From Zootoca vivipara (taxonomy: Eukaryota), in the NCBI RefSeq assembly GCF_963506605.1, contig NC_083292.1, positions 38,316,001 through 38,380,000 of the forward strand: a DNA stretch of 64,000 bases, read 5' to 3'. The notes under the pieces are model-generated. The model searched no databases and was not told the origin of the DNA. It was given only the letters and a program-made list of their open reading frames with translations. How positions within the stretch are numbered: the first letter of the stretch is position 1; every line of letters starts with the position of its first letter. The translations under genes were made by a program, and so were the position numbers. Positions 5,117 to 25,039 of this stretch are shown here, piece after piece.

Positions 5117-7127
5117 TATACAATTCAATAAGGGGTGATGGCAAACCTCTAAAGATTTCTACTCTTCCACCTCCACGAAATCCTAGGAGAAGGAAGTCTC
5201 ACCTCCTCAAAAAAACAAAACAAAACACCCCATCACAAATGTTGTGTATCTTGGGAGGACAAATTTTCTTTCACCCAACCCCCAATCTGAGAATAAAATT
5301 GTTCACCCCTCTCAATAAACTATATGCTTTATATATATTTGTGTGTGGCAATATTAAAATTTTCCTCAGATTTTTTTTTTGGGGGGGGGAGCAGAGAAAA
5401 GAAGGGATCTGGAAATTGCTGTCCATCCCCTTTTACTCTCCCAGGATTGTTTTTTTCTACTTTTGCTGGGGGGGGAGGGTTGAAGAGAAGGGGGGGAAAC
5501 AGGTCAAACCCCTGAAAATGTTTAACTTATTTAAAAGGGTTGAAATCTGGCATTGCTTTCTCAAGTCTACTTTGCTCCCCTAAAATGTTTATTTATCCTG
5601 GGACCTTCTGCATGCAAAGCGTGTGCTCTATCACTAACTTATGCACCCCCCTCAATTTCTTTAATACATATAGGGAGAGAGAAATCCCAGGTTCCCCCCC
5701 CATATTCCTTCACTATGCCTTCAAATCAGGACTGAGCTGCATCCTTCTCCCTATTCCCCCCCCCCCGCAACCCCATTCTATTTTAATGTTGAGATACTCT
5801 ATATCAGTGGTGAAAAAGGGCCATATTTGATGAAGTGAAGGGCCATGAGGGCCAACCAAAGTTGTTGAGCTTTTTTAGGGTTGAGGTTGTTGAGGTTTTT
5901 TTTAGGATTTTAGGAAATAAACCAACCGGCAGGCCGGATTAGGCCCCCGAAACCAACTTTGGACATGCGTGTTCTATATGCAACCTCATATTGTCCCTGC
6001 CTTCTCAAAGGAGTTTTGAGATGGACTCCTTTCTCTCCCTGCATTTTTTAGATCTCACCTCGCCAGTGTGAAGGGGAGCACCAATCTCCCCATGCTCTCA
6101 ATATTATTTTCATGCACAACCCCACCATCCCAGGTTTTTCAGGAGGGAGCACCCATCTTCCTTTCCTCTCAAAGCAGAACTCAGATGCCCCCATCTCCTC
6201 CAGTCTGAGACCCTCCCCACTCCTCGCAGTTCCAGGTTTCTGTTGAGATACATGGATTTTTGGAGTTGGGGGGGGAGGACAGCACCCATCTCCCTTCCTT
6301 TCACCCCCCCGCCAAAAAATCTGCTTGACCTCTCAAAGCAACATTGAAACGGACCCTTCCAACCATCGTGAGCGCCATTCCATCCCAAGTTTGTTTTTGT
6401 GAGTAGGAAACAGAAGAAACCACCATCCTCCTCCTCACTTCCTCCTCTTTCAAAACAGGACTGAAGTGGACCAGTCCCACACCATTTTGAGGTGCCCCCT
6501 CCCAGGATCTATTTACACCGAGATGCACTGAAAAGAGGCGAAGCCCCATGTTATTCTGACTTCCCTCTTTGGGCTCCCCAGAGGGCTTTGTTGGGGGTCA
6601 TCCCTTCCCACATTTTAAGTCTTCAACACCCCCCCCAATCCATCCCATGTTGGGGTGTTGCTCTTTTTCTCTATTTTTGCAGGAGGGAGGAGGAACCGTC
6701 AGCCTGCACCCCCTCCACACACAATTTCCTACCCCCTCAAAGCAGGACTGAAATGCCCCCCCCAATACCAGAACCTCCCCAGTTTATTTAAGCTAATATC
6801 CACTGAGGGATGAAAACCGCCAGCCTATTCTGTACCTCCCCCACTTGTAACCCCCTTGGTGGGGGGGGCCTTGTCCCCCAATCCCTGATTTTGAGAACCC
6901 CCCATCCATTTATGGTGAAATATTCCTCCTTCCCCTCCCATCCCTGTAGCGCCAGACCCTCCTCCCCATTACTCCTCCACAACCCCATCAATGCAGAAGC
7001 CCACCCCATTTTGAGGTCGCCCCCCCTAATAAATCTCCCTCCGCGCCCCCACCCCTTTAATCGAGGCCTCGTGGGCGGGGCCTGGCGAGGCCCCACCCCC
7101 TTAAAGGGGAAGGGCTTTCGGGCCTAC

Positions 7128-7300
7128 CTGCTCGGCTCCGGCTCCCTGGAGCGCCCCGGTGTCGTGTCCGCCTCGGAGAGGGGCAGCTCGCCCAGCGGCT
7201 CCGCAGGCTCCCCGCCAGGTCCCTCTCCCGACTGCGGGGCGGCCTCCGCCTCCTCGACCGCTTCCTGCTTCTCCGCTCCGGCCCGGCCCCGGGTCCCCTC
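7128..7300 (-). other. ZNF687: Non-coding first exon of the next minus-strand gene, probably ZNF687 (coding exons would lie left of this window)
   Basis: Minus-strand donor GAGCAG|GTAGGC at 7128/7127 inside a CpG island, with a G-rich sense-strand tract downstream as at the PSMD4 and PIP5K1A first introns. Identity rests only on synteny (PIP5K1A-PSMD4-ZNF687 are co-oriented in mammals). No coding sequence seen; the 5' end is approximate. Confidence 0.5.
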
Positions 7301-7979
7301 ATTGGCGAGGCTGGTTGCCGCTCTGAGGGTGACCTCCCGGTTGCCTGGCGCTCCATTGGGCGAACGGGACGTCGGTCAAGAGAGGCTCCCGGTCTCCCCG
7401 CCCGCCATTGGGCAAAAGCGGCTATCAGTCAAAGAGTACGTTCCGCCCTCCCCAAACTCGGTCCTCGTCGGGGGCGGGGCACAATCGTTCCGCTCGCTGG
7501 GCAGCCCTACTGGCTGGGAGGCCTGCCGCTCAAATGGCTCGCGCCCTCCTCATCCGCTGTCTATTTGGTGCTTTGCCAAGCAGAGCCAGGAGGAGAGATG
7601 TAGTCAGCTGGGTGAGCCTCCCACCGGCCAGCGTCTATTGGCTAAGGTATACCTATCATTCTCCAAGATATCCAACTAACTATTGGCTAGGGCTGCTTGC
7701 CACTCAGCTCGGTGCCAAACAGCCTTTCTATTGGCTGCGAGCCTCAAGGCGGCCGGGCTTTAATTTCATTCGCTGGCCACCTGAGGGAATACAGAAACGG
7801 CAGCAGGTGCCCATTGGCTGAGGCTTCCCGTCTCAGACAAGAACCGCCTATTAGTATTCGGCAGGGGAGATGGGCGGGGCTTGCAGGGGGCGGGAAATAG
7901 CGTCCCACTCTCTACCTTCTAATTGGCTGTACTTCGTGCTTTTTAAAACGAACAAACCACCAGCGAAATAAAAAAAATT

Positions 7980-8058: not shown

Positions 8059-10604
8059 CAGCACTTAGGCTTATTGGGGGAAATCCGTGTCACTCAAATG
8101 AGTTGCCCCCGCCTGAGGCGTCTCACGTCACTTTACTATTGGAAGGCGGGCCGTATTCTTGCCATTCAAAATAATGACTGAGCCCTCTAATAGCTGCACG
8201 CGTGAAGGAACGCCGAAGATCTGGGTGGCGATTGGCCAAAGCAAACGTCCGTCCAAACACTCCTCGCAGGAGGCAGAATGAATGGAAAGCAGCAGTGCCG
8301 CAAGGGATTCTGGGATAGTGGCCTTTAAATGAAGACGCGCAAAGGAGGTCTGAGCGTGAGGCATTATGGGGGAGTAGCGCACGGGATTCTGGGTAATGAC
8401 ACCCTTGACCTAACAAATTGATTCTTTTACATCTGGATCAAACCTTACACAACTGCACCTTCTTGCACCTTCACAACTGCAAGCTCCATTTAGGACATGT
8501 TATTTAATATTAATTAATGGTATTACAACTTAATTTTTTTATTGTTATAAATAATGTTTCTACCAAGGTTGCGGGACACCTGCAGCATGCAATGTGCTGC
8601 TGAGCTATAAGTGGTCAGCATGGCCAGTCCTTGGCGGGAGTTGTAGCGCAGCAACAATGGAAGTGCCTAGGGTTCTTGCCTAGGGAACTTTCCAAAGAGG
8701 AATACAACAGGAAGAGCCTCCCAACTGTGTATGCTCTGTACATTTAAAGCACCCTCCCCAAAAATCCTGGGAACTGTAGTTTACAGAGCTACAATACTCA
8801 GGAAAATTCTAGTCCTCATGGTTCTGATATAAAACAGGAAACTTCCGAGTCAGACCACTGGTGGTCTGTGTACCTCGATGCGGCTCAAGACGGCGACCAA
8901 CAAGTTAAAGCATGCAGTGCCCTCAAGGCCTCCCCGTCCCCTTTTCTCTGAGCCTGGGAGGCATTGTCCTTTGTCCTCCCACCTTGCCAAGGGGAGCCAA
9001 ATGATTTTCATCTCCCGCCGTCCACTTCTCCTTCGCTGCCCTATCGCTGTGATTGGGGTGCATCAGCTTGTAAACAATCTTGCTTTTATGTGCCTCCGAA
9101 ATCAGGCTCTTTCCACCCCGCCACCCTCCCTGAGAGCCAAGGCCTTTCGCTTGGAAGTTTTCCGAGCCGATCGAGTGATGCGGCAGTTTCTCCCGAAAAC
9201 AGGGCCTCGTCTGTGCCTCGGTCCGCTCCGTTTTCAACAGCGAGGTTATCGGGGGAGAGCCTCGGCCTCTCTTTCAAAAGGGCCTTTTCTTCCCAGCATG
9301 TCAGGTGGTGGAACCTGAGAGAGTCGGCCGCAAGCCAGAAAGCTTTTGGCTGGAGGAATGAAGTCTCCTTTCCTCGCCCCCCCCCCCCCCCGACTTCTGC
9401 CGCTCCTCAGAGGGCTCCTGGAATAAAGGGTTGACTATCCTTTAAGTGTAGATCAGAACATCCGCAAAACACGAGGTTGCCATATTTTATTGCATGCTTT
9501 TGAACGACAGTGGGGGAGAGACAAAGGGAAATTCAGCAGCAGGTCAAATCCTGCTGAATGTAAGGATTAGCGGGGGAGGAGGCAGGCTTCACCAGACGAA
9601 TATCTGCCTATTACACGGCAGCCACGCTGGAGAGGAAACTGCTGTAGTTGTAATTCCACCTGTCACTTTATTGAATATAATTTCTTTAAAAAACAGCACA
9701 ACAATCTGCGCTCTTGAAGTAAGCAGCAAATAATTGTAGCGTTGGAAGGGACCTGCAAGGGTCATCTAGCGCAACCCCCTGCAATTTGTCTTGCTTGTCT
9801 GGATGAGGGATGGAGGGGTGTGTGTATGTGTGTACTCAAACAGAGGAAACATATAGACAGACTGCCTTACAGTGAGTCGGACCATTGTGGTCCATTTAGC
9901 TCAATATTGTCCTCACTGACTGGCAGCAGCTCTCCAGGTTTTCGGAGAAGGGGGTTGTCCAAGCCCTAAGTCGAAACGCCAGAGATCAAACCAGGGATGT
10001 TCTGCGTGCAAAGCAGGTGCTCTGCCACAGAGGTATACAGCCGTTCCCTTAAAAATAGGCTTAAGATTCTCATCCTCATGGTTAAAGGTCTGTTTGCAGT
10101 ATTGCACTCTAGAGTCCAAGCAGGGAATGAAAAAAGAAGAGTGTCTATCAGGGCATGAGCAGAGTGCACCCACTTTCTCATTAGGAGATTGGGTATCCCA
10201 GCCAGAGATCCTTTTTAACTGTAAAATACGATGAAGGTTCATGCCAAATGCTTGCCTTACTCCGAATGCATTCATTGAAATTAAGGGGAATTTGCAGGGG
10301 TTGGTCTAGATGTCCTCAGGGTCCCTTCTATCTCCAGAATTCTGCGATTAACTTAGATCTATTGGTTTCAGGGAGTCTCCTTCCACTTCGCTGGATGCAA
10401 CCCTCTGTAACCCTCAGCCCACAAGTGGAAACAGAACTAGCCCTATAGAAAAGGCCTTTGCACCTTGCTGGGCAGCAGGTATTTGGGGGCAGAAGGTGGG
10501 GAGAGGCGGCAAAAATTTATTCAGTGCCCCCATGAGAGCCTGGAGCTGGGATGTGCACAGAGGGGGCTATTGTTTGGTAGGGCTCTGTGCCAGGCAGCCG
10601 AGAC

Positions 10605-10614
10605 TTTATAAGAG
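10605..10614 (+). promoter_or_regulatory. TATA box of the SFTPC-like gene
   Basis: TTTATAAGAG about 85 nt upstream of the ATG at 10692, consistent with a TSS near 10635-10640. Confidence 0.6.
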
Positions 10615-10691
10615 CTTCCCGCTGGCATCTCACACGCCTACGGAGAAGCCAAAGTCTGGATCCATTCAGCCCTACCGTTGGGGAAGAGAAA

Positions 10692-11155
10692 ATGGTGAGC
10701 GAGGACAAGAACCCCGAATCATGGCCGGCAGGGCTGCACCTCAAGAGCCCACCCTACGTAAGTAGTTCACTTTAGAAGTGAGGGGGGGAAGGCCACCTCA
10801 ATTTTTAAACCCCATTGTGTCTCCCGTTCCTTTAACCGCTGCTCAACAGGCAGGAATCCATCAGGGGAAGTTCTTCCCAGCCTTGTGTGGTTGCCGTGTG
10901 CAATGGCGGGGGAGAGAAGCTGCACCGGTGGGATTTCTGCCTGCTGCCCTGCTAGGGGGTAGGGGTGCAACTTCCAGTGTGGGAATGCCTACGGTTATTG
11001 ACTTGCCATTTTTTAAATCTTCGGGGCTCGGTTCTCCAGCGCGACGAGAGCACTCTGAAGCATGTGCAGAGTGCAAATGCAGAAACAGGCTGACATTTCA
11101 CAGATTTTAGAAAAGGGATTTCAGGTGCTGTGAGATGCCATTACCTTCATCTTTC

Positions 11156-11210
<55 letters not shown>

Positions 11211-14200
11211 CTCTCCCTTCTCAACCCTTCCCCAATTTTTGTTCAGACTCTCCACTCCAGCCTTGAGCTGGCAGAGCCTCCTGTCGCCTCAAACCGCAAG
11301 CTGGTGATTCTGATGGTGGGCGCCGTCTCAGCCCTCAGCATCAGCATCGTGGGGGTCCTGCTGGCCACCTACCTCGGGCGGGCGGACTGCATCCAGGTAC
11401 GTTACGGAGGGACAGTGGTGACGGAGGCAGCACCTGCCTTCTGCCTTCATAGACGGAAGTCCTGGGGGTCTGAATCCAGCACATTCTGCCTTCCGCCACT
11501 GCAGAAGTCTTGGGTGGCCAGATCCAGCACCTTTGGCCAAGGCAGCCGCATTTCAATCTGTTTCCCCGTTTCCTTTCTCGGCAGAGAGACTCCTTCAGCT
11601 TCCTCCCTCCCCAAGTCAACGTCCAGAACGAAGCGTCTCTCTTGCTGGCGCTCAGCGAACTGGGTGAACAAGGCGTCGCTCCAGGAATCACCTGCGACTT
11701 AAGAAACGTGAGTCGCAGAATCGCCAATAGGGCCAGAATTAGTGTCACAAGAGGTTATGAGGACAGTGTTGCTGTTTTTATCTCCCAGTAGGGTGTCCTT
11801 AAGTTGTCCGGTAGTGCCTTAGCGGTGACTGAACCACACTAAGGTGGATTTAAGAACATAGGAAGCTGCTTTGAGTCAGACCGGTGGTGGATCTATCTAC
11901 AACGACTGACAGCAGCTGTCCAGGGCTTCAGGTTGTGAGGTTTTTCTGGAGATACTGGCAATTGGACCGGGAACCTTTTGCATGCCAAGCAGACATGGCA
12001 GCTCTTTCACTGAGCTACTGCCNNNNNNNNNNNNNNNNNNNNNNNNNNNNNNNNNNNNNNNNNNNNNNNNNNNNNNNNNNNNNNNNNNNNNNNNNNNNNN
12101 NNNNNNNNNNNNNNNNNNNNNNNNNNNNNNNNNNNNNNNNNNNNNNNNNNNNNNNNNNNNNNNNNNNNNNNNNNNNNNNNNNNNNNNNNNNNNNNNNNTT
12201 TCAAGCTCTCTCTAGAGCAGGCATGGCCAAACTTGGCCCTCCAGATGTTTTGGGACTACAACTCCCATCATCCCTAGCTAACAGGACCAGTGGTCAGGGA
12301 TGATGGGAATTGTAGTTCCAAAACATGCCTACTCTAGAGATATCCAAAGTGCATCAGAGTTAATTAAACCACACTGAGGTGCTCTTAGGAGCATGGGAGT
12401 GGCTCTTTTATTTATTTGAAATGTATAGCCTGCGTTAATGCAATAAAAAAAGACAGAGCTGAAAACAAAAATAACCTTTGCAAAATGGATGAGATGTAGC
12501 GGAAACAACAGCCAGGCTGAACGACCCGAAAATCATACCTGGGGACAGGAGGGAGAGTGGGATTCGGACGCTGCTGGGCCAAGGGGTTTGGGAGCCTCCT
12601 CTGCCTGGTCCACCTCTCCCCTCTCTCTCCCCCAACAGCACTTGATGGTGTACCATGGCCAGCCAGAAGGGTGTGTGGCCCGAAAGATGGAGGTGTCTGA
12701 ACCGCTCCCCTCCTGCCAGGAACTGGAGGCGTACTTCCAAGCTGTCTTGGTGAGGATCAGCAGGTGTCCTGGAGGCGGTGCTAGGCCATAGCTGCCAAGT
12801 TTTCCCTTTTCTCGCGAGGAAGCCTATTCAGCATAAGGGAAAATCCCTGTAAAAAAGGGATAACTTGGCAGCTATGTGCTAGGCACATGGGGAGTAGCTT
12901 GGACTTATGGCCCTTGCCCTGAAAGCAAAGCAAGATCCTAGTCCTCATTGTTTTGAGGACAGGGCTGATTTGAACAGGAGCAGAGGGAAGTGCCTTAGAG
13001 CAAAGGTCCATCTTGAGAAACTGAACCTTCTGTATTTGAGGCATCAGCTCTACCACTGAGCTACGGCCCTTTCCTTAAAAGTAATTCTAAGATTCCGGTC
13101 GTCATGGTTCTGAAAGAAACGCTGACATATAATTAAATGCAGCATCTCAAAACAAAGCAATCATGGCGCCGCCTTTGAACTGTTATTTTAAACATGATTA
13201 ATGCAGACATGATCAGTAGTGGTTTATTATTTTATACATAAAGGCATTTTTTTACTTTATACATTTTTATCTGTATGCAAACTCGTTTAATAATAGTTTG
13301 GTAATAGTTGATCTCTGGTTTTAAAAATACGGTTTTAACTGTACGGTTTTATGTGTGACTGCTGGAAACTGCTCTGATTTCTCCCCCCCCCCCCCTTGAA
13401 CAAATACCAGTATATAGCTGTTGTTATATACTGCAAACCAACAAATTATACCAGCCGACTGAAAATCATACGGTTAAAAGCGATTTAGCAGCACAAACCC
13501 CCTGCATGTTTGCTCTGAAGTAAGCCCCACTTGTTCAAAGGGTTTTACTCTCAGGTAAATAGGCCTAGCGGGGGTTGCAGACTTAGAGGTGTTTCATCTG
13601 ACAACAGACTGCAGTTTAACTAATATAGGTGCCAACTAAGGGAGCCAAAAAAGGGGGTAACTCATCCTTCAAGGTGTATTCGGGGGGGGGGGTCTGAAGA
13701 GTCTTGCTTCCAGCTTCAAGACTTGTGGACTGGGGTCCACCTCTTCAGATGCATGAAGTATCATCTTGAGTTGCAAATATAACACCCACAGGTGCTCAGA
13801 GGGGTGGTTGTGGTTCTGAATTCAGAAGGAAGTTTGCAGCAAGTTTAAGGACAAGTACCATATACTTGTCCTTAAACTTTAAGTTTGAGGACAAGTACCG
13901 TATAAGGGACGCGGGTGGCACTGTGGGTTAAACCACAGAGCCTAGGGCTTGCCAATCAGGTCGGCGGTTCGAATCCCCATGAGGGGGTGAGCTCCCGTTG
14001 CTCGGTCCCTGCTCCTGCCAACCTAGCAGTTCGAAAGCGCGTCAAAGTGCAAGTAGATAAATAGGGGGAAGGCAAACAGCGTTTCCGTGCGCTGCTCTGG
14101 TTCGCCAGAAGCGGCTTGGTCATGCTGGCCACATGACCTGGAAGCCAATAACACGAGATGAGCGCCGCAACCCCAGAGTCGGTCACGACTGGACCTAATG

Positions 14201-15547
14201 GTCAGGGGTCCCTTTACCTTTACCATATACCTAACAGAGTTATGTAGCTAGGTTGGAGTGTCTAAACCAAAACAGTCCAAAAACACTAAAGTGAAGACCC
14301 AGTGTCAATAAGCAGGGAGTTCCAGAGATCGGTGATGTCTCATTAAAGGGCTGAGAATGTGTGTGAGTACAGCAGCAAGGATTCTCTGTGCACAGAAATG
14401 GAAGGAGAGAAAACACACCCAGAGGAAGAATGGTTGATGAAAACCTTGGAATATGCAGAGATGGCAAAATTGACGGCACTGATAAAAGATACAAATTTAG
14501 AATGTTTTAAAGAAGACTGGAAACCATTTCAAGTTTTTATAAAAAGTTACTTCCCGTATGTGAAGACCACAGCGGGGATTGAAATGTAAGAAAACAGCAG
14601 AATATATTAAGAAACATTTTAGAAATTTGGTAAGACGGAACCTTCAAATGCAATTGTGTGTAACTTGCGTCATATTGAGAGCATGAAGCGAAAACATTGT
14701 ATATAGCAGTTGTCAAACCTGCTTTTGCTGGCTCGGTTTCTTGTTGCAGAAAAACGCCACGCTGGGTATCACCTCGGAGGTGCAGATCGTGGGGACAGCA
14801 TCCCTGGGCAGCCTCACCACACTGCTGTGTAGCAACAAGCCCACCTACCTGGTCAACAGTTTTGCACGTAAGTAGGGTGGAAAGGTGCCGCTGGAGTGGA
14901 CTGTACAGATTGTACCTCTGTCGGAGGGTGGGGGGGAAGACAGAGAGATAAAGGTCTGGATATCTGATTTAGGAGCTGGGAGGAAGCTTTGAACTATACG
15001 TCCCAGCAACAGCAGCAACCCTGGCCATTTGGCCAATGCTTGCTAGGGCTGATGGGAGTTGTAATTCAGCAACAGCTGGAGGGCCGAAGGTTCCCCCACA
15101 CTTTGTTTAGAGATACCCAGATCTCTCTCGCTCGGTAAAAATCCAGCCGATGTAGTTTGTAAAATGCCCAATTTTGGAATGTGCCAAAAGTTCCTCTAGT
15201 CCAAGGAGGGCTAATCCCTGGTTTGGGGAGCCGGTTTGCACATACACACCCAAAAGAATTTGGATCAAGTTTTTTTTTTAATGATTAAAGTAGACACAGG
15301 ATTGCACACAGAAGCTTTTTGGAAAAAGGTGAGAGAATGGCATCAAAGGCGCCCTTTGGTTGGAAAAGGGAGAGCTTACATCACAAGAGCCTTTTGGCAG
15401 AACGGGGAATAGAATAGCATCGCACACAAACACAACAGGGGATGCCTTTCCTGTTAGACAGAACTTGTTTAGCCCACCTCTTCTTAAAATATACTTTCCC
15501 ATTTCTTTGCAGCTTCTCCAAGGCACACCATGAGCAGACTTGCTTAA
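10692..15547 (+). CDS. Pro-surfactant-protein-C-like type II membrane BRICHOS-domain protein (probable SFTPC paralog), 191-200 aa
   Basis: GT-AG exons: 10692-10757 (MVSEDKNPESWPAGLHLKSPPY), 11247-11396 (TLHSSLELAEPPVASNRKLVILMVGAVSALSISIVGVLLATYLGRADCIQ, single TM), 11585-11707 (123 nt, ...LALSE...GITCDLRN), 12639-12749 (111 nt, HLMVYHGQPEGCVARKMEVSEPLPSCQELEAYFQAVL), 14750-14867 (KNAT...SLGSLTTLLCSNKPTYLVNSFA). It then either reads through RK-stop (14875) or splices to 15513-15547 (PSPRHTMSRLA-stop). Introns 1-4 are phase 0 and the frame is open. BRICHOS Asp and both Cys are present. Confidence 0.85.
11151..11212. repeat. (CTTT)n microsatellite just upstream of the SFTPC-like exon 2 acceptor
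   Basis: Seen directly. Confidence 0.95.
12023..12198. other. Assembly gap (N run)
   Basis: 176 N. Confidence 1.
12218..12331. mobile_element. hAT-type MITE with 8-bp TSD
   Basis: CAGGCATG...CATGCCTA termini flanked by CTCTAGAG on both sides; internal GGACTACAACTCCCATCA/TGATGGGAATTGTAGT palindrome. Many degenerate copies of this family occur through the window. Confidence 0.8.
13906..14224 (+). mobile_element. Sauria SINE (lacertid POM/Squam1 type), near full length
   Basis: tRNA-like head GGGACGCGGGTGGCACTGTGG...GGTTCGAATCCCC, Bov-B-like 3' part GAGTCGGTCACGACTGGACC, (CCTTTA)n tail, imperfect TSD TACC(G/A)TATA. Confidence 0.9.
14415..14700 (+). mobile_element. L1-like LINE 3' fragment in intron 4 of the SFTPC-like gene
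   Basis: EEWLMKTLEYAEMAKLTALIKD...EDWKPF resembles the squamate L1 ORF2 C-terminus; related sequence at about 46250-46430. Confidence 0.6.
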
Positions 15548-15791
15548 GACAAGCCGGGAAGTTGTGCAGATCACCAATTAACATCTCCTCTTCCCTCCTC
15601 CCTGCAAAAACCCCCAAGACGTGACAAAGGACCTCAGAATGGCGCGTGATCCTGTCACTATTGATTCCCCCCATATAGTATGTGGGGAGGGGGCTGAGAC
15701 CCTGTTTCACTGCAGCTCAAATTTGTATGTGATTTCCCCCCCCTCCCTGCAACTCCTTGTCATAACCAAATCATTAGCAATAACAAGAATT

Positions 15792-15797
15792 ATTAAA
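15792..15797 (+). terminator. Probable polyadenylation signal of the SFTPC-like gene
   Basis: ATTAAA followed by a GT-rich element (gtgtttgtgtgt, about 15811-15822). Confidence 0.45.
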
Positions 15798-18253
15798 AAA
15801 AACTGAAAGGGTGTTTGTGTGTCCATTTCAGGGTAGAGTGTTTTGAAAAGGCAAACTCGAGTAGCGTTGGGGCAACACAGCCACAATTCTGCATTGGCAC
15901 AGATTGCGATATTAAATTTCCTGAGAATCTGAGCAAAATACAACACAAGAAAGCTCAGCCTCCCTTATTCAATGTGACATGTGCCCTCTGGCGGGAGAAA
16001 GGATCACTGCATCACACACAAATCTTTGTTTCCATCGCCCAATCTCAAATATTAAACATCTTCCTGCACTTGCCAATTTGTGGCCCTCTGCCTGGTCATT
16101 TGCATAACTTTATAGTGCTCTGCATCACTGCTCATTTGCTGCTTGATAGGCGAGGGTCCCCAAGTTGGCTGCTTTCGGTCCTTCCTGCAGAAGCGCAGCT
16201 GCCTCACCAAAACATCTGTGCTCATCAGCTAAGGAGGGTTTGCAGGAAGAGCAGTACCCATTGGCTATGAAAATGCTGAAGTTTTCTGCACTTGCTCAGC
16301 TGCAGAAAACTTGCCTGCCTCTAGTAAAATTAAAACAAGCTTAATTTTTTAATCCATTTAGGCTATATATACTGCTTCATCACAATAGTCTCAAAAGCTC
16401 TGATTTTAGAGAAACATAGAACTGAAGAGTTGGGGTCATTTGGTCCACCCCCCAATGATGAAGGGAGGAGCATCCATCAGCTTCTGAGTCGGTTTCACTG
16501 TTGCCAACAGCTCTTGCTGTTAGAAAGTTCTCCCTGATGTTTAGCCGGAATCTCCTTTCTTGTCATTTGAATCCATTGCCTTAACTCCTTCCCTCTGGAT
16601 CCGAGCATTAAATGTACATTCCCCTCTCTCACAAACCAGGGTTCCTGGCTTATACTAAAAATTCCAGGACATGTATATATATTTTTAAAAAGTTTATGCA
16701 AATGTCTTCTGAGGCTACATTTCTGGGGTACTTAAGTTCCCTGGTCAGCTTCGGAAGTACTCTAGGAAGTTCCGACCAAATTTTTTGCACTCTACTAAAA
16801 GTTTCCCTCACTGCACAAACTGCACTGTTTCAAAACAAGGCAACTTCAGACATGGGTTATGAGGCTGGCTTGTTTAACTAACCACTCAGCTGTGAACCAT
16901 GATTCCTGCTAGAGCCCTGTGCAACAGAATAAGCCGGCTTTCTATGAAAGGGAAACTGATATTAGGTTCTGCTTGGCTTCTGGCTTCGCAGGAGCTTGAA
17001 CCCTTGGCTTTGCCCCTGCTCAGCTAGAATGTAGCATCCTTGCATTGGTACCTGTGGGGTCGAAGGAAGCTGCCCAACTCCTTAACATAAGATTCCAGTT
17101 AAATGGGAATGAAAGCAGCTAACATTTGGGGCTGAACACCTTTTTAAAAAAGAAGAAGAGGGGTTTCCTTGGAGAGCAACTCAGTCATTTAAAAGCACCA
17201 GATGGCAAAATTCAATTTTCAGACCGCATGATATACTTTTGATACTGGCTGCTGGGAAGTATTTGTTGGGAAGGAGTTTATGAATCCATTCATGGCTATG
17301 GTAGACATTCAGCCATAAGGACTAATAGGCCTCAGCTCCCATCAATTCATGTAATCCAAATCCATCCAAACTGATGGCCAATCTCTGCTTTTTGTAACAA
17401 GGGTCGTAGTTGGATGGTTTAGAATTGTAAGCCTTCAGGTAGGGACTGACTTAATTCTCCATGTACGTAAGACAGTCTGGAAGCCTCTTTGGCTGAAGAG
17501 AGTGGTGCAAATAAATACATACAAAAACTAGAAAGCCCTGTGAAAAACTGCAACTCAATCACATCTTTATATAAATCTATCACACAGAATACACTTGGGA
17601 TACTGCGTGTGGCTCTAATCACCTTGCCTCAAAAACGATACTGTAGAGCCGTTAAAGGTCCAGAAAAGGGCCACCGAAATGATCCAGGGGGGTGGAGTGA
17701 CCCCCGCATGAGGAATGTTTGCGGCCTTTGCAGCCTTTTAAAGAAAGGGCAGGACAGAGGAGACACAACAGAGGTTCAAAGTGGCAAAAGTGGAGAGAAG
17801 CTTTTCTCTCTCAGTGCTGTCAAACTGTGTCAAAAGGCACAGTGATTCAGGATGCGCAAAAGGGTTAGGGTTAGGGGTGTCCTTTGAACACCTGGAGGGC
17901 TGCAGCTTTGGGGAAAGGGTGTTCCAACCCATAATAAGCCCACCTGCTTCCTAGTTTCCCCTTTTTGTCATGGGCGCTAAAGCCTTGCGTCTGTTGAAAC
18001 CAGAACCTTGAGTTCTCTGTCCTGCCGGCAGCTGGAAGCTTTCCGGTGGCCGCAGTGCGTGCGCCTCTCAACCTCTTCACGCCAATTTCGTGGCAGGGAA
18101 ACGAAGGTGCCTGCGCGCAGGGAGGGGGGCGGTGCCGTTTTGTCAGAAAGGAAAGGGAAGCTAGGAGATGGGCCGCTCACGTTCTGACATAAACCACAGC
18201 TTAATGGAAGCAGGCGGTGGAAAAACGCAACACCGCAAAGAAAATTTAAGGTT

Positions 18254-18511: not shown

Positions 18512-25039
<6,528 letters not shown>

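What the first reader, a model, noticed from the sequence alone, without database searches (positions are those of the whole stretch)
10605..15797. Intact SFTPC-like BRICHOS gene between PSMD4 and the putative ZNF687 promoter, invisible in the ORF track
Seen: five or six GT-AG exons splice into an open 191-200 aa frame (cytosolic N-terminus, one TM helix, linker, BRICHOS-like C-terminus), with a TATA box and a poly(A) signal. Recalled: human SFTPC has phase-0 introns with exon 3 = 123 nt and exon 4 = 111 nt, exactly the sizes here. Motifs align exon by exon: exon 1 end KSPPY vs ESPP|DY; PVASNRKLVI...IVGVLL vs PVHLKRLLI...IVGALL; ITCDLRN|HLMVY vs VVYDYQQ|LLIAY (conserved BRICHOS Asp); EGCV...PLPS vs TCCY...SIPS; SLGSLTTLLCSNKPTYLV vs FLGMAVSTLCGEVPLYYI. 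LALSE occurs in exon 3 of both, although at a different offset. Human SFTPC lies at 8p21 near BMP1, and I know of no BRICHOS gene between human PSMD4 and ZNF687. Inference: a DNA-level (intron-retaining) duplicate of SFTPC that is reptile-specific or was lost in mammals, i.e. a second, little-described proSP-C family member.
Basis: partly seen in the sequence, partly recalled or inferred. Interest (0 to 1): 0.92.

Follow-up and report, generated by a model that had tools for sequence, protein, structure and literature searches.

The report
Unrecognised BRICHOS gene resembling surfactant protein C
Between the ZNF687 promoter side and PSMD4 lies an intact, spliced six-exon lizard gene for a 200-residue membrane protein with a divergent BRICHOS chaperone domain; it belongs to an unstudied family found from bichir to reptiles that resembles, but is not, the lung surfactant protein C precursor.

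Summary
Six GT-AG exons on the + strand give an open 200-codon frame. Each exon peptide is found exactly and contiguously in RefSeq XP_060125357.1 (Zootoca vivipara LOC132591299, "uncharacterized protein"). A 909-nt contig of a public run joins exons 2-3-4-5-6 at these exact junctions. The N gap (12023-12198) lies inside intron 3 and does not touch the frame.

- **A BRICHOS domain is supported.** Pfam gives the lizard protein no hit, but 9 of 31 orthologs hit PF04089 below threshold over almost the whole model. The AlphaFold model's best PDB matches are the proSP-C BRICHOS structure 2YAD, then a second BRICHOS entry. 2YAD is the only Z>=5 among 48,161 chains. The Asp and two Cys that define BRICHOS are invariant. 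A language-model search puts surfactant protein C clusters first.
- **It is neither SFTPC nor reptile-specific.** Orthologs occur in squamates, turtles, alligator, frogs, a caecilian, a newt and Polypterus. Anolis, Xenopus and Pogona also have a canonical SFTPC. The poly-Val helix, the Cys pair and the SP-C propeptide signature are absent.

The family is annotated only as "uncharacterized", and I found no paper on it. A same-window scan note (s1-850528) had already flagged the missing poly-Val and Cys pair. Function and tissue remain unknown.

The parts
10607..10612 (+). TATA-like box (TATAAG), 80 nt upstream of the ATG
   Evidence: Read from the sequence. Function is inferred. One X1 contig (10551-10702) starts upstream of it, so other start sites exist.
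10692..10757 (+). Exon 1 coding part, 22 codons: cytosolic N-terminus with Lys6 and the conserved SPPY motif
   Evidence: identical to residues 1-22 of P0028. K6, P20, P21 and Y22 are invariant or nearly so in 31 orthologs. Donor is GTAAGT.
11247..11396 (+). Exon 2, 50 codons: transmembrane helix (residues about 38-66) rich in Gly, Ala and Ser, then Cys70
   Evidence: Best 19-residue hydropathy window is 41-59. AlphaFold helix 38-70. Present in the spliced X1 contig.
11585..11707 (+). Exon 3, 41 codons (123 nt): highly conserved linker (QVNVQNEASLLLALSE) and the first BRICHOS strands, ending ITC-D110-LRN
   Evidence: D110 is invariant in 37 orthologs. Present in the spliced X1 contig.
12023..12198 (.). 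Assembly gap (N run) inside intron 3; not part of the coding sequence
   Evidence: The e3-e4 joint 11707|12639 is seen in the X1 contig and in P0028.
12639..12749 (+). Exon 4, 37 codons (111 nt): BRICHOS strands with Cys125, Cys139 and the start of helix 1
   Evidence: C125 and C139 are invariant.
14750..14867 (+). Exon 5, 39 codons + 1 nt: N152-A-T glycosylation sequon, a strand, short helix 2 with Cys177, and the last strand (TYLV)
   Evidence: Donor at 14868 (GTAAGT) is used in the X1 contig.
15513..15547 (+). Exon 6 coding part (variable tail PSPRHTMSRLA, stop TAA 15545-15547)
   Evidence: The X1 contig covers 15513-15729.
15548..15797 (+). 3' untranslated region, ending at the ATTAAA poly(A) signal (15792-15797)
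   Evidence: Sequence. The X1 contig reaches 15729. The 3' end itself was not observed.
8865..9062 (+). Possible alternative upstream 5' exon (matches the N-terminus of Podarcis isoform models)
   Evidence: tblastn of P0001 and P0024 against the window, 74-76% identity. Its use in this species is not shown.
10371..10484 (+). Possible alternative upstream exon or 5' extension of exon 1; the frame is closed by a stop here
   Evidence: tblastn of P0001 and P0024. The ORF 10248-10448 ends in a stop.

Best explanation
This is the Zootoca vivipara-type copy of a conserved vertebrate gene (RefSeq LOC132591299 and its orthologs). It encodes a 200-residue type II membrane protein. The parts in order are:
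- a short cytosolic N-terminus with Lys6 and an SPPY motif;
- one TM helix with a conserved face of small residues (G47, A51, S55, G58, A62, G66);
- a highly conserved luminal linker;
- a divergent BRICHOS domain (about residues 79/106-186), with the Asp at the end of a strand (D110) and a Cys pair placed to link a strand to the short second helix (C125, C177);
- a conserved N-glycosylation sequon (N152).

It is a separate BRICHOS family that Pfam does not recognise. In layout it is closest to proSP-C, because nothing follows the BRICHOS domain.

Inferred mechanism, by analogy with proSP-C and Bri2: in the ER lumen the BRICHOS domain acts as a built-in chaperone for an aggregation-prone part of its own chain. 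With no C-terminal peptide, that part must be the TM helix or the conserved linker, which would be the functional or released product.

Shown here: gene structure, splicing, conservation, and a BRICHOS-like sequence pattern and predicted fold. Inferred: membrane topology, the disulfide, chaperone activity, the client segment and any role in the lung.
For: Gene and splicing.

Identity with XP_060125357.1.

Conservation: 44 homologs, all 'uncharacterized', from squamates, turtles, Alligator, frogs, a caecilian, a newt and Polypterus. Identity to the lizard protein is 64-67% for Xenopus and 49% for Polypterus. 41 columns are invariant in 37 sequences, including C70, C109, D110, C125, C139, N152 and C177.

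BRICHOS:
- PF04089 is the family hit by most orthologs (9 of 31). The best is 18.4 bits, E 0.0026, residues 110-183 against model positions 10-90 of 91.
- The AlphaFold model (31 sequences, domain pLDDT 66-80) has strands and helices in BRICHOS order.
- Foldseek's top five of 350,542 chains are all 2YAD, the proSP-C BRICHOS domain (E 0.019-0.036, probability 0.87-0.97, 24-26% identity). 8OVI, 'BRICHOS monomer', is at rank 13.
- VIA-align gives 2YAD Z 6.3 (rmsd 2.9 A, 70 residues) and 8OVI Z 5.0, then 3.9 for unrelated chains.
- Without Foldseek, 2YAD is the only Z>=5 of 48,161 chains (Z 5.8, 71 of 77 residues).
- The language-model search puts surfactant protein C clusters first for the whole protein (0.93, 211 of 256 features). 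For residues 73-190 alone it gives SP-C-like, ITM2 and gastrokine-2 clusters, all BRICHOS.

The D/C/C signature, the four-region layout and the placing of Asp and Cys on the secondary structure match the published definitions (PMC2751770, PMC9714404).
Against: - The lizard protein has no Pfam hit even at E<=10. All ortholog hits are below the 25-bit cut-off.
- Profiles of the family find no BRICHOS chain in the PDB by sequence and no SFTPC or other BRICHOS protein among 1.84 billion representatives at E<=0.001.
- The structure model is only moderately confident (mean pLDDT 60). Z of about 6 is in the range the tool calls 'middling'.
- Expression evidence is thin: one contig in a run whose RNA nature is guessed, plus a few raw reads in one of three RNA runs. 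The tissue is unknown.
- No experiment bears on function.
Confidence: 0.8

Rival explanations
1. It is an ancient sister gene of SFTPC. The two would share a more recent common ancestor with each other than with any other BRICHOS family, the duplication predating or accompanying the origin of SFTPC. The new copy kept the gene structure but has a different TM segment.
For: - Same layout as proSP-C only: no region after BRICHOS (PMC2751770).
- Exon 4 has 37 codons in both (PMC2063649).
- SP-C clusters rank first in the language-model search.
- 2YAD is the best structural match.
Against: - The preference for SP-C over other BRICHOS families is small: 0.87 against 0.86 and 0.84 for the domain alone, and Z 6.3 against 5.0.
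- No tree or profile comparison could be made.
- The family is in Polypterus, whereas SFTPC is reported to start in the lungfish-tetrapod ancestor (bioRxiv 10.1101/2024.07.14.603411). A simple SFTPC-derived origin therefore needs an older SFTPC or the reverse direction.
- The two loci are not linked.
Confidence: 0.35
2. It is the lizard's own SFTPC, diverged and moved to a new place (a relocated ortholog).
For: Overall size and layout resemble proSP-C. No canonical SFTPC of this genome was seen here (one search found no note of one).
Against: - Anolis carolinensis and Xenopus have GenBank SFTPC sequences (PMC6191699), and Pogona lung expresses Sftpc (bioRxiv 10.1101/2024.07.14.603411). All three also have this gene (P0032, P0009/P0020, P0008).
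- There is no PF08999 hit, no poly-Val helix and no Cys pair.
- The family is 64-67% identical between frog and lizard yet undetectably similar to SFTPC by HMMER.
Confidence: 0.03
3. The luminal domain is not homologous to BRICHOS. It would be an unrelated small alpha/beta domain that resembles BRICHOS by chance or convergence.
For: No significant sequence match at any curated threshold. Foldseek E is only 0.02 and Z about 6. Language-model scores of 0.9 or more occur by chance 4-10 times in 100.
Against: Nothing else matched the domain with Z>=5 among 48,161 chains.
Confidence: 0.1

Closest known systems
proSP-C (SFTPC), precursor of lung surfactant protein C; BRICHOS structure PDB 2YAD
   Same: - About 200-residue type II membrane proprotein with a short cytosolic N-terminus, Lys at position 6 and a proline-proline-tyrosine motif just before exon 2.
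- One TM helix, a conserved linker, then a BRICHOS domain with nothing after it.
- Exon 4 of 37 codons.
- Best structural match (Z 5.8-6.3, 20-26% identity in the structural alignments).
   Different: - No poly-Val/Ile helix; the TM is rich in Gly, Ala and Ser.
- No juxtamembrane Cys pair for palmitoylation, and no PF08999 propeptide signature.
- The motif is SPPY, not PPDY.
- The loop between the two signature Cys is shorter (52 against 68 residues; the SP-C figure is from memory).
- Extra conserved Cys70, Cys109 and Cys139.
- Present in Polypterus and coexists with SFTPC in frogs and lizards.
Bri2/ITM2B and the other ITM2 BRICHOS proteins (PDB 8OVI, 'BRICHOS monomer')
   Same: Type II membrane protein with a luminal BRICHOS domain. 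Second-best structural match (Z 5.0, rmsd 2.8 A, 73 residues). An ITM2 cluster ranks second for the domain alone in the language-model search.
   Different: ITM2 proteins have a C-terminal region after BRICHOS that is released by furin-type cleavage and is the chaperone's client. This family has only a 10-20-residue variable tail and no such peptide.
Salamander SFTPC-like (Lewis, Dorantes and Hanken 2018, PMC6191699)
   Same: A second SP-C-related gene in a non-mammalian tetrapod, proposed to have a function beyond the classical lung one.
   Different: The salamander gene is a close paralogue that matches only SFTPC in BLAST and is reported as salamander-specific. The family here does not match SFTPC by sequence search and occurs in frogs, caecilians, a newt, reptiles and bichir.
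OAF, added to the BRICHOS family from AlphaFold models (Sanchez-Pulido and Ponting 2022, PMC9714404)
   Same: A precedent for a BRICHOS member that sequence models missed and that was recognised by fold plus the Asp and disulfide signature. An OAF cluster also appears, low in the list, in the domain-only language-model search.
   Different: OAF is secreted, has a long disulfide-rich C-terminal mature polypeptide and occurs across animals, humans included.

Membership tests
BRICHOS superfamily (Pfam PF04089) | One strictly conserved Asp and two strictly conserved Cys within a domain of about 93 residues (PMC2751770) | tested here: met
   D110, C125 and C177 are invariant in 37 orthologs. Spacing is 15 and 52 residues, against 16 and 59 in ITM2A numbering (PMC2751770). 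The Pfam alignment of orthologs spans 109-183.
BRICHOS superfamily (Pfam PF04089) | Score above Pfam's gathering threshold (25 bits) | tested here: not met
   P0028 and the five exon peptides give no hit at E<=10. 9 of 31 orthologs hit below threshold, the best at 18.4 bits, E 0.0026.
BRICHOS superfamily (Pfam PF04089) | Fold: central sheet with two helices, Asp at the end of strand 2, Cys of strand 4 paired with Cys of the short helix 2 (PMC9714404) | tested here: met
   The AlphaFold model has E106-110 ending at D110, E124-129 containing C125, and H171-176 next to C177. 2YAD and 8OVI are the best PDB matches. Model confidence is moderate, and the disulfide geometry could not be inspected.
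BRICHOS superfamily (Pfam PF04089) | Layout: hydrophobic segment, linker, BRICHOS, and usually a C-terminal region | tested here: met
   TM 38-66, linker 67-105, BRICHOS to about 186. [quoted passage not shown]
proSP-C / SFTPC family | Mature SP-C segment: poly-Val/Leu/Ile helix and the SP-C propeptide signature (PF08999) | tested here: not met
   No PF08999 hit in any of 31 members. The TM reads LVILMVGAVSALSISIVGVLLATYL.
proSP-C / SFTPC family | Palmitoylated Cys (pair) on the N-terminal side of the helix | tested here: not met
   No Cys before residue 70 in P0028. The feature itself is from established knowledge of SP-C.
proSP-C / SFTPC family | Detectable sequence similarity to SFTPC proteins | tested here: not met
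   A profile search of 1.84 billion representatives returned only this family. PDB sequence searches missed 2YAD. Only the structural alignments give 20-26% identity.
proSP-C / SFTPC family | Same exon-intron structure (exon 3 = 123 nt, exon 4 = 111 nt, phase-0 introns) | tested here: inconclusive
   Here e3 = 123 nt, e4 = 111 nt and introns 1-4 are phase 0. For SFTPC only the 37-residue exon 4 is confirmed from a paper (PMC2063649). The rest is recollection. Whether other BRICHOS genes share these introns was not tested.
proSP-C / SFTPC family | Orthologous position beside BMP1/LGI3 | not testable with these tools
   The window shows a PSMD4 exon (UIM) on the minus strand at 19713-20363.

The most novel reading that the evidence does not exclude
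This is an old, overlooked BRICHOS family, the closest relative of SFTPC, and older than SFTPC as currently dated because it is already present in the bichir. Air-breathing fishes, amphibians and non-avian reptiles kept it, while birds, mammals and teleosts lost it. It would then mark the ancestral state from which the surfactant protein C precursor arose. Its conserved TM and linker segment would be a second BRICHOS-guarded membrane peptide with its own, possibly respiratory-epithelium, function.
Probability: 0.25. Interest if true: 0.75.

Novelty: new member of a known kind. Interest (0 to 1): 0.55.

Why it matters
BRICHOS domains are studied as natural anti-amyloid chaperones, in proSP-C and lung fibrosis and in Bri2 and dementia. 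The list of families is short: five subfamilies plus OAF in humans. A further family would add a new natural client-chaperone pair, because:
- it is strongly conserved for over 400 million years;
- domain databases miss it;
- it shares the unusual 'no C-terminal peptide' layout otherwise reported only for proSP-C.

It would also give a comparison point for how the SP-C precursor arose. A recent preprint dates SFTPC to the lungfish-tetrapod ancestor, while this family is already present in a ray-finned fish with lungs.

It is also a candidate for gene loss in birds and mammals. The practical result for annotation is that about 40 'uncharacterized LOC' genes can be labelled BRICHOS-domain proteins.

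Tried and rejected
- **Exon-by-exon Pfam scan:** nothing. The pieces are too short to be informative.
- **PDB sequence searches** with exon 2 and with family profiles A1 and A3: only chance hits (Wzc, cyanovirin, claudin-4, a designed repeat protein).
- **First AlphaFold run,** 9 sequences: pLDDT 42, discarded.
No SFTPC, ITM2, gastrokine, CNMD/TNMD or BRICD5 sequence was therefore available by reference.
- **Joined protein:** I did not splice the exons into one sequence. I searched exon by exon by reference and used the database protein P0028, which equals the exon translations.
Synteny in Xenopus, Polypterus and Alligator, and ortholog DNA, could not be obtained.
- **Literature:** LOC identifiers of six orthologs gave no paper. 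The supplements of a paper on genes lost in evolution (PMC10416458) do not list the Xenopus or Anolis identifiers searched; one stored file was truncated. Broader BRICHOS searches found no description of this family.
- **Readings rejected:** the 191-aa five-exon reading, 'reptile-specific', and 'relocated SFTPC ortholog'.
- **P0014 and P0015,** GC-rich Logan fragments first considered possibly avian or mammalian, match the Alligator protein and are crocodilian read-throughs of exons into introns.
Full report
**1. What is in the sequence**

Reading 10300-16100 and translating each proposed exon by reference gives six coding pieces on the + strand:

| Exon | Coordinates | Content |
|---|---|---|
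| e1 | 10692-10757 | MVSEDKNPESWPAGLHLKSPPY |
| e2 | 11247-11396 | 50 codons, hydrophobic core |
| e3 | 11585-11707 | 41 codons |
| e4 | 12639-12749 | 37 codons |
| e5 | 14750-14867 | 39 codons + 1 nt |
| e6 | 15513 onward | stop TAA 15545-15547 |

- All five introns begin GT and end AG behind pyrimidine tracts. Introns 1-4 are phase 0 and intron 5 is phase 1.
- TATAAG lies at 10607-10612 and ATTAAA at 15792-15797.
- No single ORF shows the gene. The longest ORF touching it (11130-11702, 190 aa) is exon 2 read on into intron 2.
- The N run 12023-12198 lies inside intron 3 (11708-12638).

**2. Is the model real**

Instead I searched with the natural ORF 11130-11699, scoring only its exon 2 part. 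This found 'uncharacterized protein LOC...' entries of Podarcis and other squamates and of Xenopus.

Cluster look-up added Lacerta agilis and Zootoca vivipara proteins of exactly 200 residues. A script showed that all six exon peptides occur exactly and contiguously (offsets 0, 22, 72, 113, 150, 190) in P0028, which is XP_060125357.1, Zootoca vivipara LOC132591299. The window is therefore that species or a very close relative. From here on P0028 stands for the spliced product.

Public reads support the splicing.
- Run X1, same organism label, kind guessed as RNA, holds a 909-nt contig. It lies as 11245-11393, 11582-11707, 12639-12748, 14749-14867 and 15513-15729, which is exons 2 to 6 joined at the predicted junctions.
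- That settles the gap question. Exon 3 is joined directly to exon 4, so nothing coding is hidden in the Ns.
- It also shows that the donor at 14868 is used. The product is the 200-residue form, not the 191-residue read-through.
- Of three RNA runs with raw reads (6% of each read), X19 has a few reads on exons 3-6 and X18 and X20 have none. Expression is low or tissue-restricted, and the tissue is unknown.

One loose end remains. 186 nt of the contig upstream of exon 2 did not lie on exon 1. Podarcis isoform models have upstream exons that map to 8865-9062 and 10371-10484 of the window.

**3. The family**

A profile search of the 5.8-billion-protein collection gave 44 proteins. Every one is named 'uncharacterized' or 'hypothetical', and none has a precomputed Pfam domain. 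They come from:
- lizards, snakes and an amphisbaenian;
- turtles and Alligator;
- many frogs, the caecilian Rhinatrema and the newt Lissotriton;
- the bichir Polypterus senegalus (P0060, and a fragment fused to an MSTO1 model, P0012).

A full HMMER pass over 1.84 billion representatives found only seven 50%-identity clusters, all from this family. There was no bird, mammal or teleost protein and no SFTPC.

Conservation is strong. Identity to the lizard protein is 64-67% for Xenopus and 49% for Polypterus. In 37 sequences 41 columns are invariant. The best-conserved parts are the linker and BRICHOS exons 3 and 4.

**4. Is there a BRICHOS domain**

It has no family at E<=10, either as exons or as P0028. 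Four lines of evidence nevertheless converge.

(a) *Sub-threshold Pfam hits.* When all 31 members of alignment A3 were scanned, PF04089 was the family matched by most members (9). The best was 18.4 bits and E 0.0026 in Engystomops. The alignment runs from residue about 110 to 183 against model positions 10-90 of 91, which is the whole domain at the expected place.

(b) *Predicted fold.* An AlphaFold model from 31 sequences (mean pLDDT 60, 66-80 over the domain) has the elements E82-85, H88-101, E106-110, E115-121, E124-129, H139-154, E161-164, H171-176 and E182-185.
- Foldseek's five best of 350,542 PDB chains are all 2YAD, the BRICHOS domain of proSP-C (E 0.019-0.036, probability 0.87-0.97, 24-26% identity over the whole target). 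A second BRICHOS entry, 8OVI, is at rank 13.
- VIA-align gives 2YAD Z 6.3 (rmsd 2.9 A, 70 residues) and 8OVI Z 5.0. Unrelated chains follow at 3.9.
- In the search that does not depend on Foldseek, 2YAD is the only chain of 48,161 with Z>=5 (Z 5.8, 71 of 77 residues). Everything below it matches only the TM helix.

(c) *Signature residues.* The three residues that define the superfamily are one Asp and two Cys (PMC2751770). Here they are invariant (D110, C125, C177). They sit where PMC9714404 says they should: Asp at the end of a strand, the first Cys in the following strand pair, and the second Cys at the short second helix.

(d) *Language-model search.* The nearest clusters to the whole protein are three 'surfactant protein C' clusters (0.93, 208-211 of 256 features). 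For residues 73-190 alone the nearest are SP-C-like, ITM2 and gastrokine-2 clusters, all BRICHOS.

Each line is weak alone, and the Z and E values are modest. But all four point to the family named in advance, and nothing else competes. I put BRICHOS homology at about 0.85-0.9.

**5. Is it SFTPC**

No.
- The family lacks the poly-Val helix, the Cys pair before the helix and the PF08999 signature.
- It is not detectably similar to SFTPC by HMMER.
- It coexists with a canonical SFTPC. GenBank SFTPC sequences of Anolis carolinensis and both Xenopus species were used by Lewis et al. (PMC6191699). Sftpc is reported as highly expressed in the lung of Pogona and the other tetrapods studied (bioRxiv 10.1101/2024.07.14.603411). 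All these species also carry this gene (P0032, P0009, P0020, P0023, P0008).
- The salamander 'SFTPC-like' gene of PMC6191699 is a different, much closer SFTPC paralogue.

What it does share with proSP-C, more than with other BRICHOS proteins:
- its overall size and layout, including the absence of any region after BRICHOS;
- a Lys at position 6 and a Pro-Pro-Tyr motif at the end of exon 1 (proSP-C has K6 and PPDY, from my own knowledge);
- exon 4 of 37 codons, since deletion of SFTPC exon 4 removes 37 residues (PMC2063649).

Whether the two are sister genes is open. The preference for SP-C over ITM2 or gastrokines in the domain-only search and in Z is within noise. No SFTPC or other BRICHOS sequence was available by reference, so I made no tree and no profile-profile comparison. 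The family's presence in Polypterus, set against the reported origin of SFTPC in the lungfish-tetrapod ancestor, means it cannot be a young or reptile-specific copy of SFTPC.

**6. How it probably works (inference)**

- *Topology.* Basic residues (R39, K40) precede the helix. The single conserved N-x-T sequon (N152) and all five Cys lie after it. This fits a type II orientation with the domain in the ER lumen or outside the cell.
- *Client segment.* In known BRICHOS proteins the domain chaperones an aggregation-prone part of the same precursor. With no C-terminal peptide, the client here should be N-terminal to the domain, as in proSP-C. It would be either the TM helix or the conserved linker (LPPQVNVQNEASLLLALSELGEQG, 10 of 27 positions invariant).
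- *TM helix.* It is not beta-prone poly-Val. It carries a conserved stripe of small residues (G47, A51, S55, G58, A62, G66), which suggests helix-helix packing such as oligomerisation or a membrane partner.
- *Cysteines.* There is an odd number of luminal Cys (70, 109, 125, 139, 177). That leaves room for a second internal disulfide plus one intermolecular bond.

A role in the air-breathing epithelium is suggested only by the phyletic pattern (lunged fish, amphibians, non-avian reptiles). That pattern may equally reflect annotation. I give it low weight.

**7. Context**

A PSMD4 exon (Pfam UIM) lies on the minus strand in the ORF 19713-20363. A GC-rich island (GC 0.70) lies at 7000-7499. I did not verify ZNF687 itself.

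**8. Limits**

- No human sequence was fetched or compared. 2YAD appears only as a search hit.

**Verdict**

This is a real, intact, conserved gene. It is already modelled in databases but unnamed and unstudied. It is best read as a new BRICHOS family with a proSP-C-like layout, and it is not SFTPC.

Noticed in passing
window 12235-12316, and a related copy near 15030-15075: Hairpin-forming, MITE-like repeat in introns 3 and 5, with inverted arms (tgggactacaactcccatcatccc / gggatgatgggaattgtagttcc). RNA runs show very high depth and many 'opposite strands' joints here, so it is an abundant, transcribed repeat family of this genome.
   Followed up: no
window 12780-12880 and 13900-14225: Two more intronic repeats, the second looking like a tRNA-derived SINE. 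Read depth is in the hundreds to tens of thousands in all four runs, unrelated to the gene's own expression.
   Followed up: no
window 11150-11210: (TTTC)n microsatellite in intron 1, just upstream of the exon 2 acceptor. Read laying skipped it as a repeat.
   Followed up: no
window 8865-9062 and 10371-10484: These stretches match the N-terminal extensions of Podarcis isoform models (P0001, P0024). The frame is closed in this window, so they are probably alternative 5'UTR exons from an upstream promoter. The extended 247-373-aa database models are likely over-predictions.
   Followed up: partly
run X1 contig (record 2), 5' 186 nt: The only assembled transcript joins exons 2-6, but its upstream 186 nt do not lie on exon 1 (10692-10757). 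It may carry an alternative first exon lying before 10500, outside the laid stretch.
   Followed up: no
window 19713-20363, minus strand: This ORF contains a ubiquitin-interaction motif (Pfam UIM, E 7.9e-05), consistent with a PSMD4 exon. Further PSMD4-like pieces lie on the minus strand near 21900-22325.
   Followed up: partly
P0012 (Polypterus senegalus KAG2463425.1): The C-terminal part of this family's domain is fused to an MSTO1 gene model in the bichir. This is probably an annotation merger of neighbouring genes, and hints that the bichir copy lies next to MSTO1.
   Followed up: no
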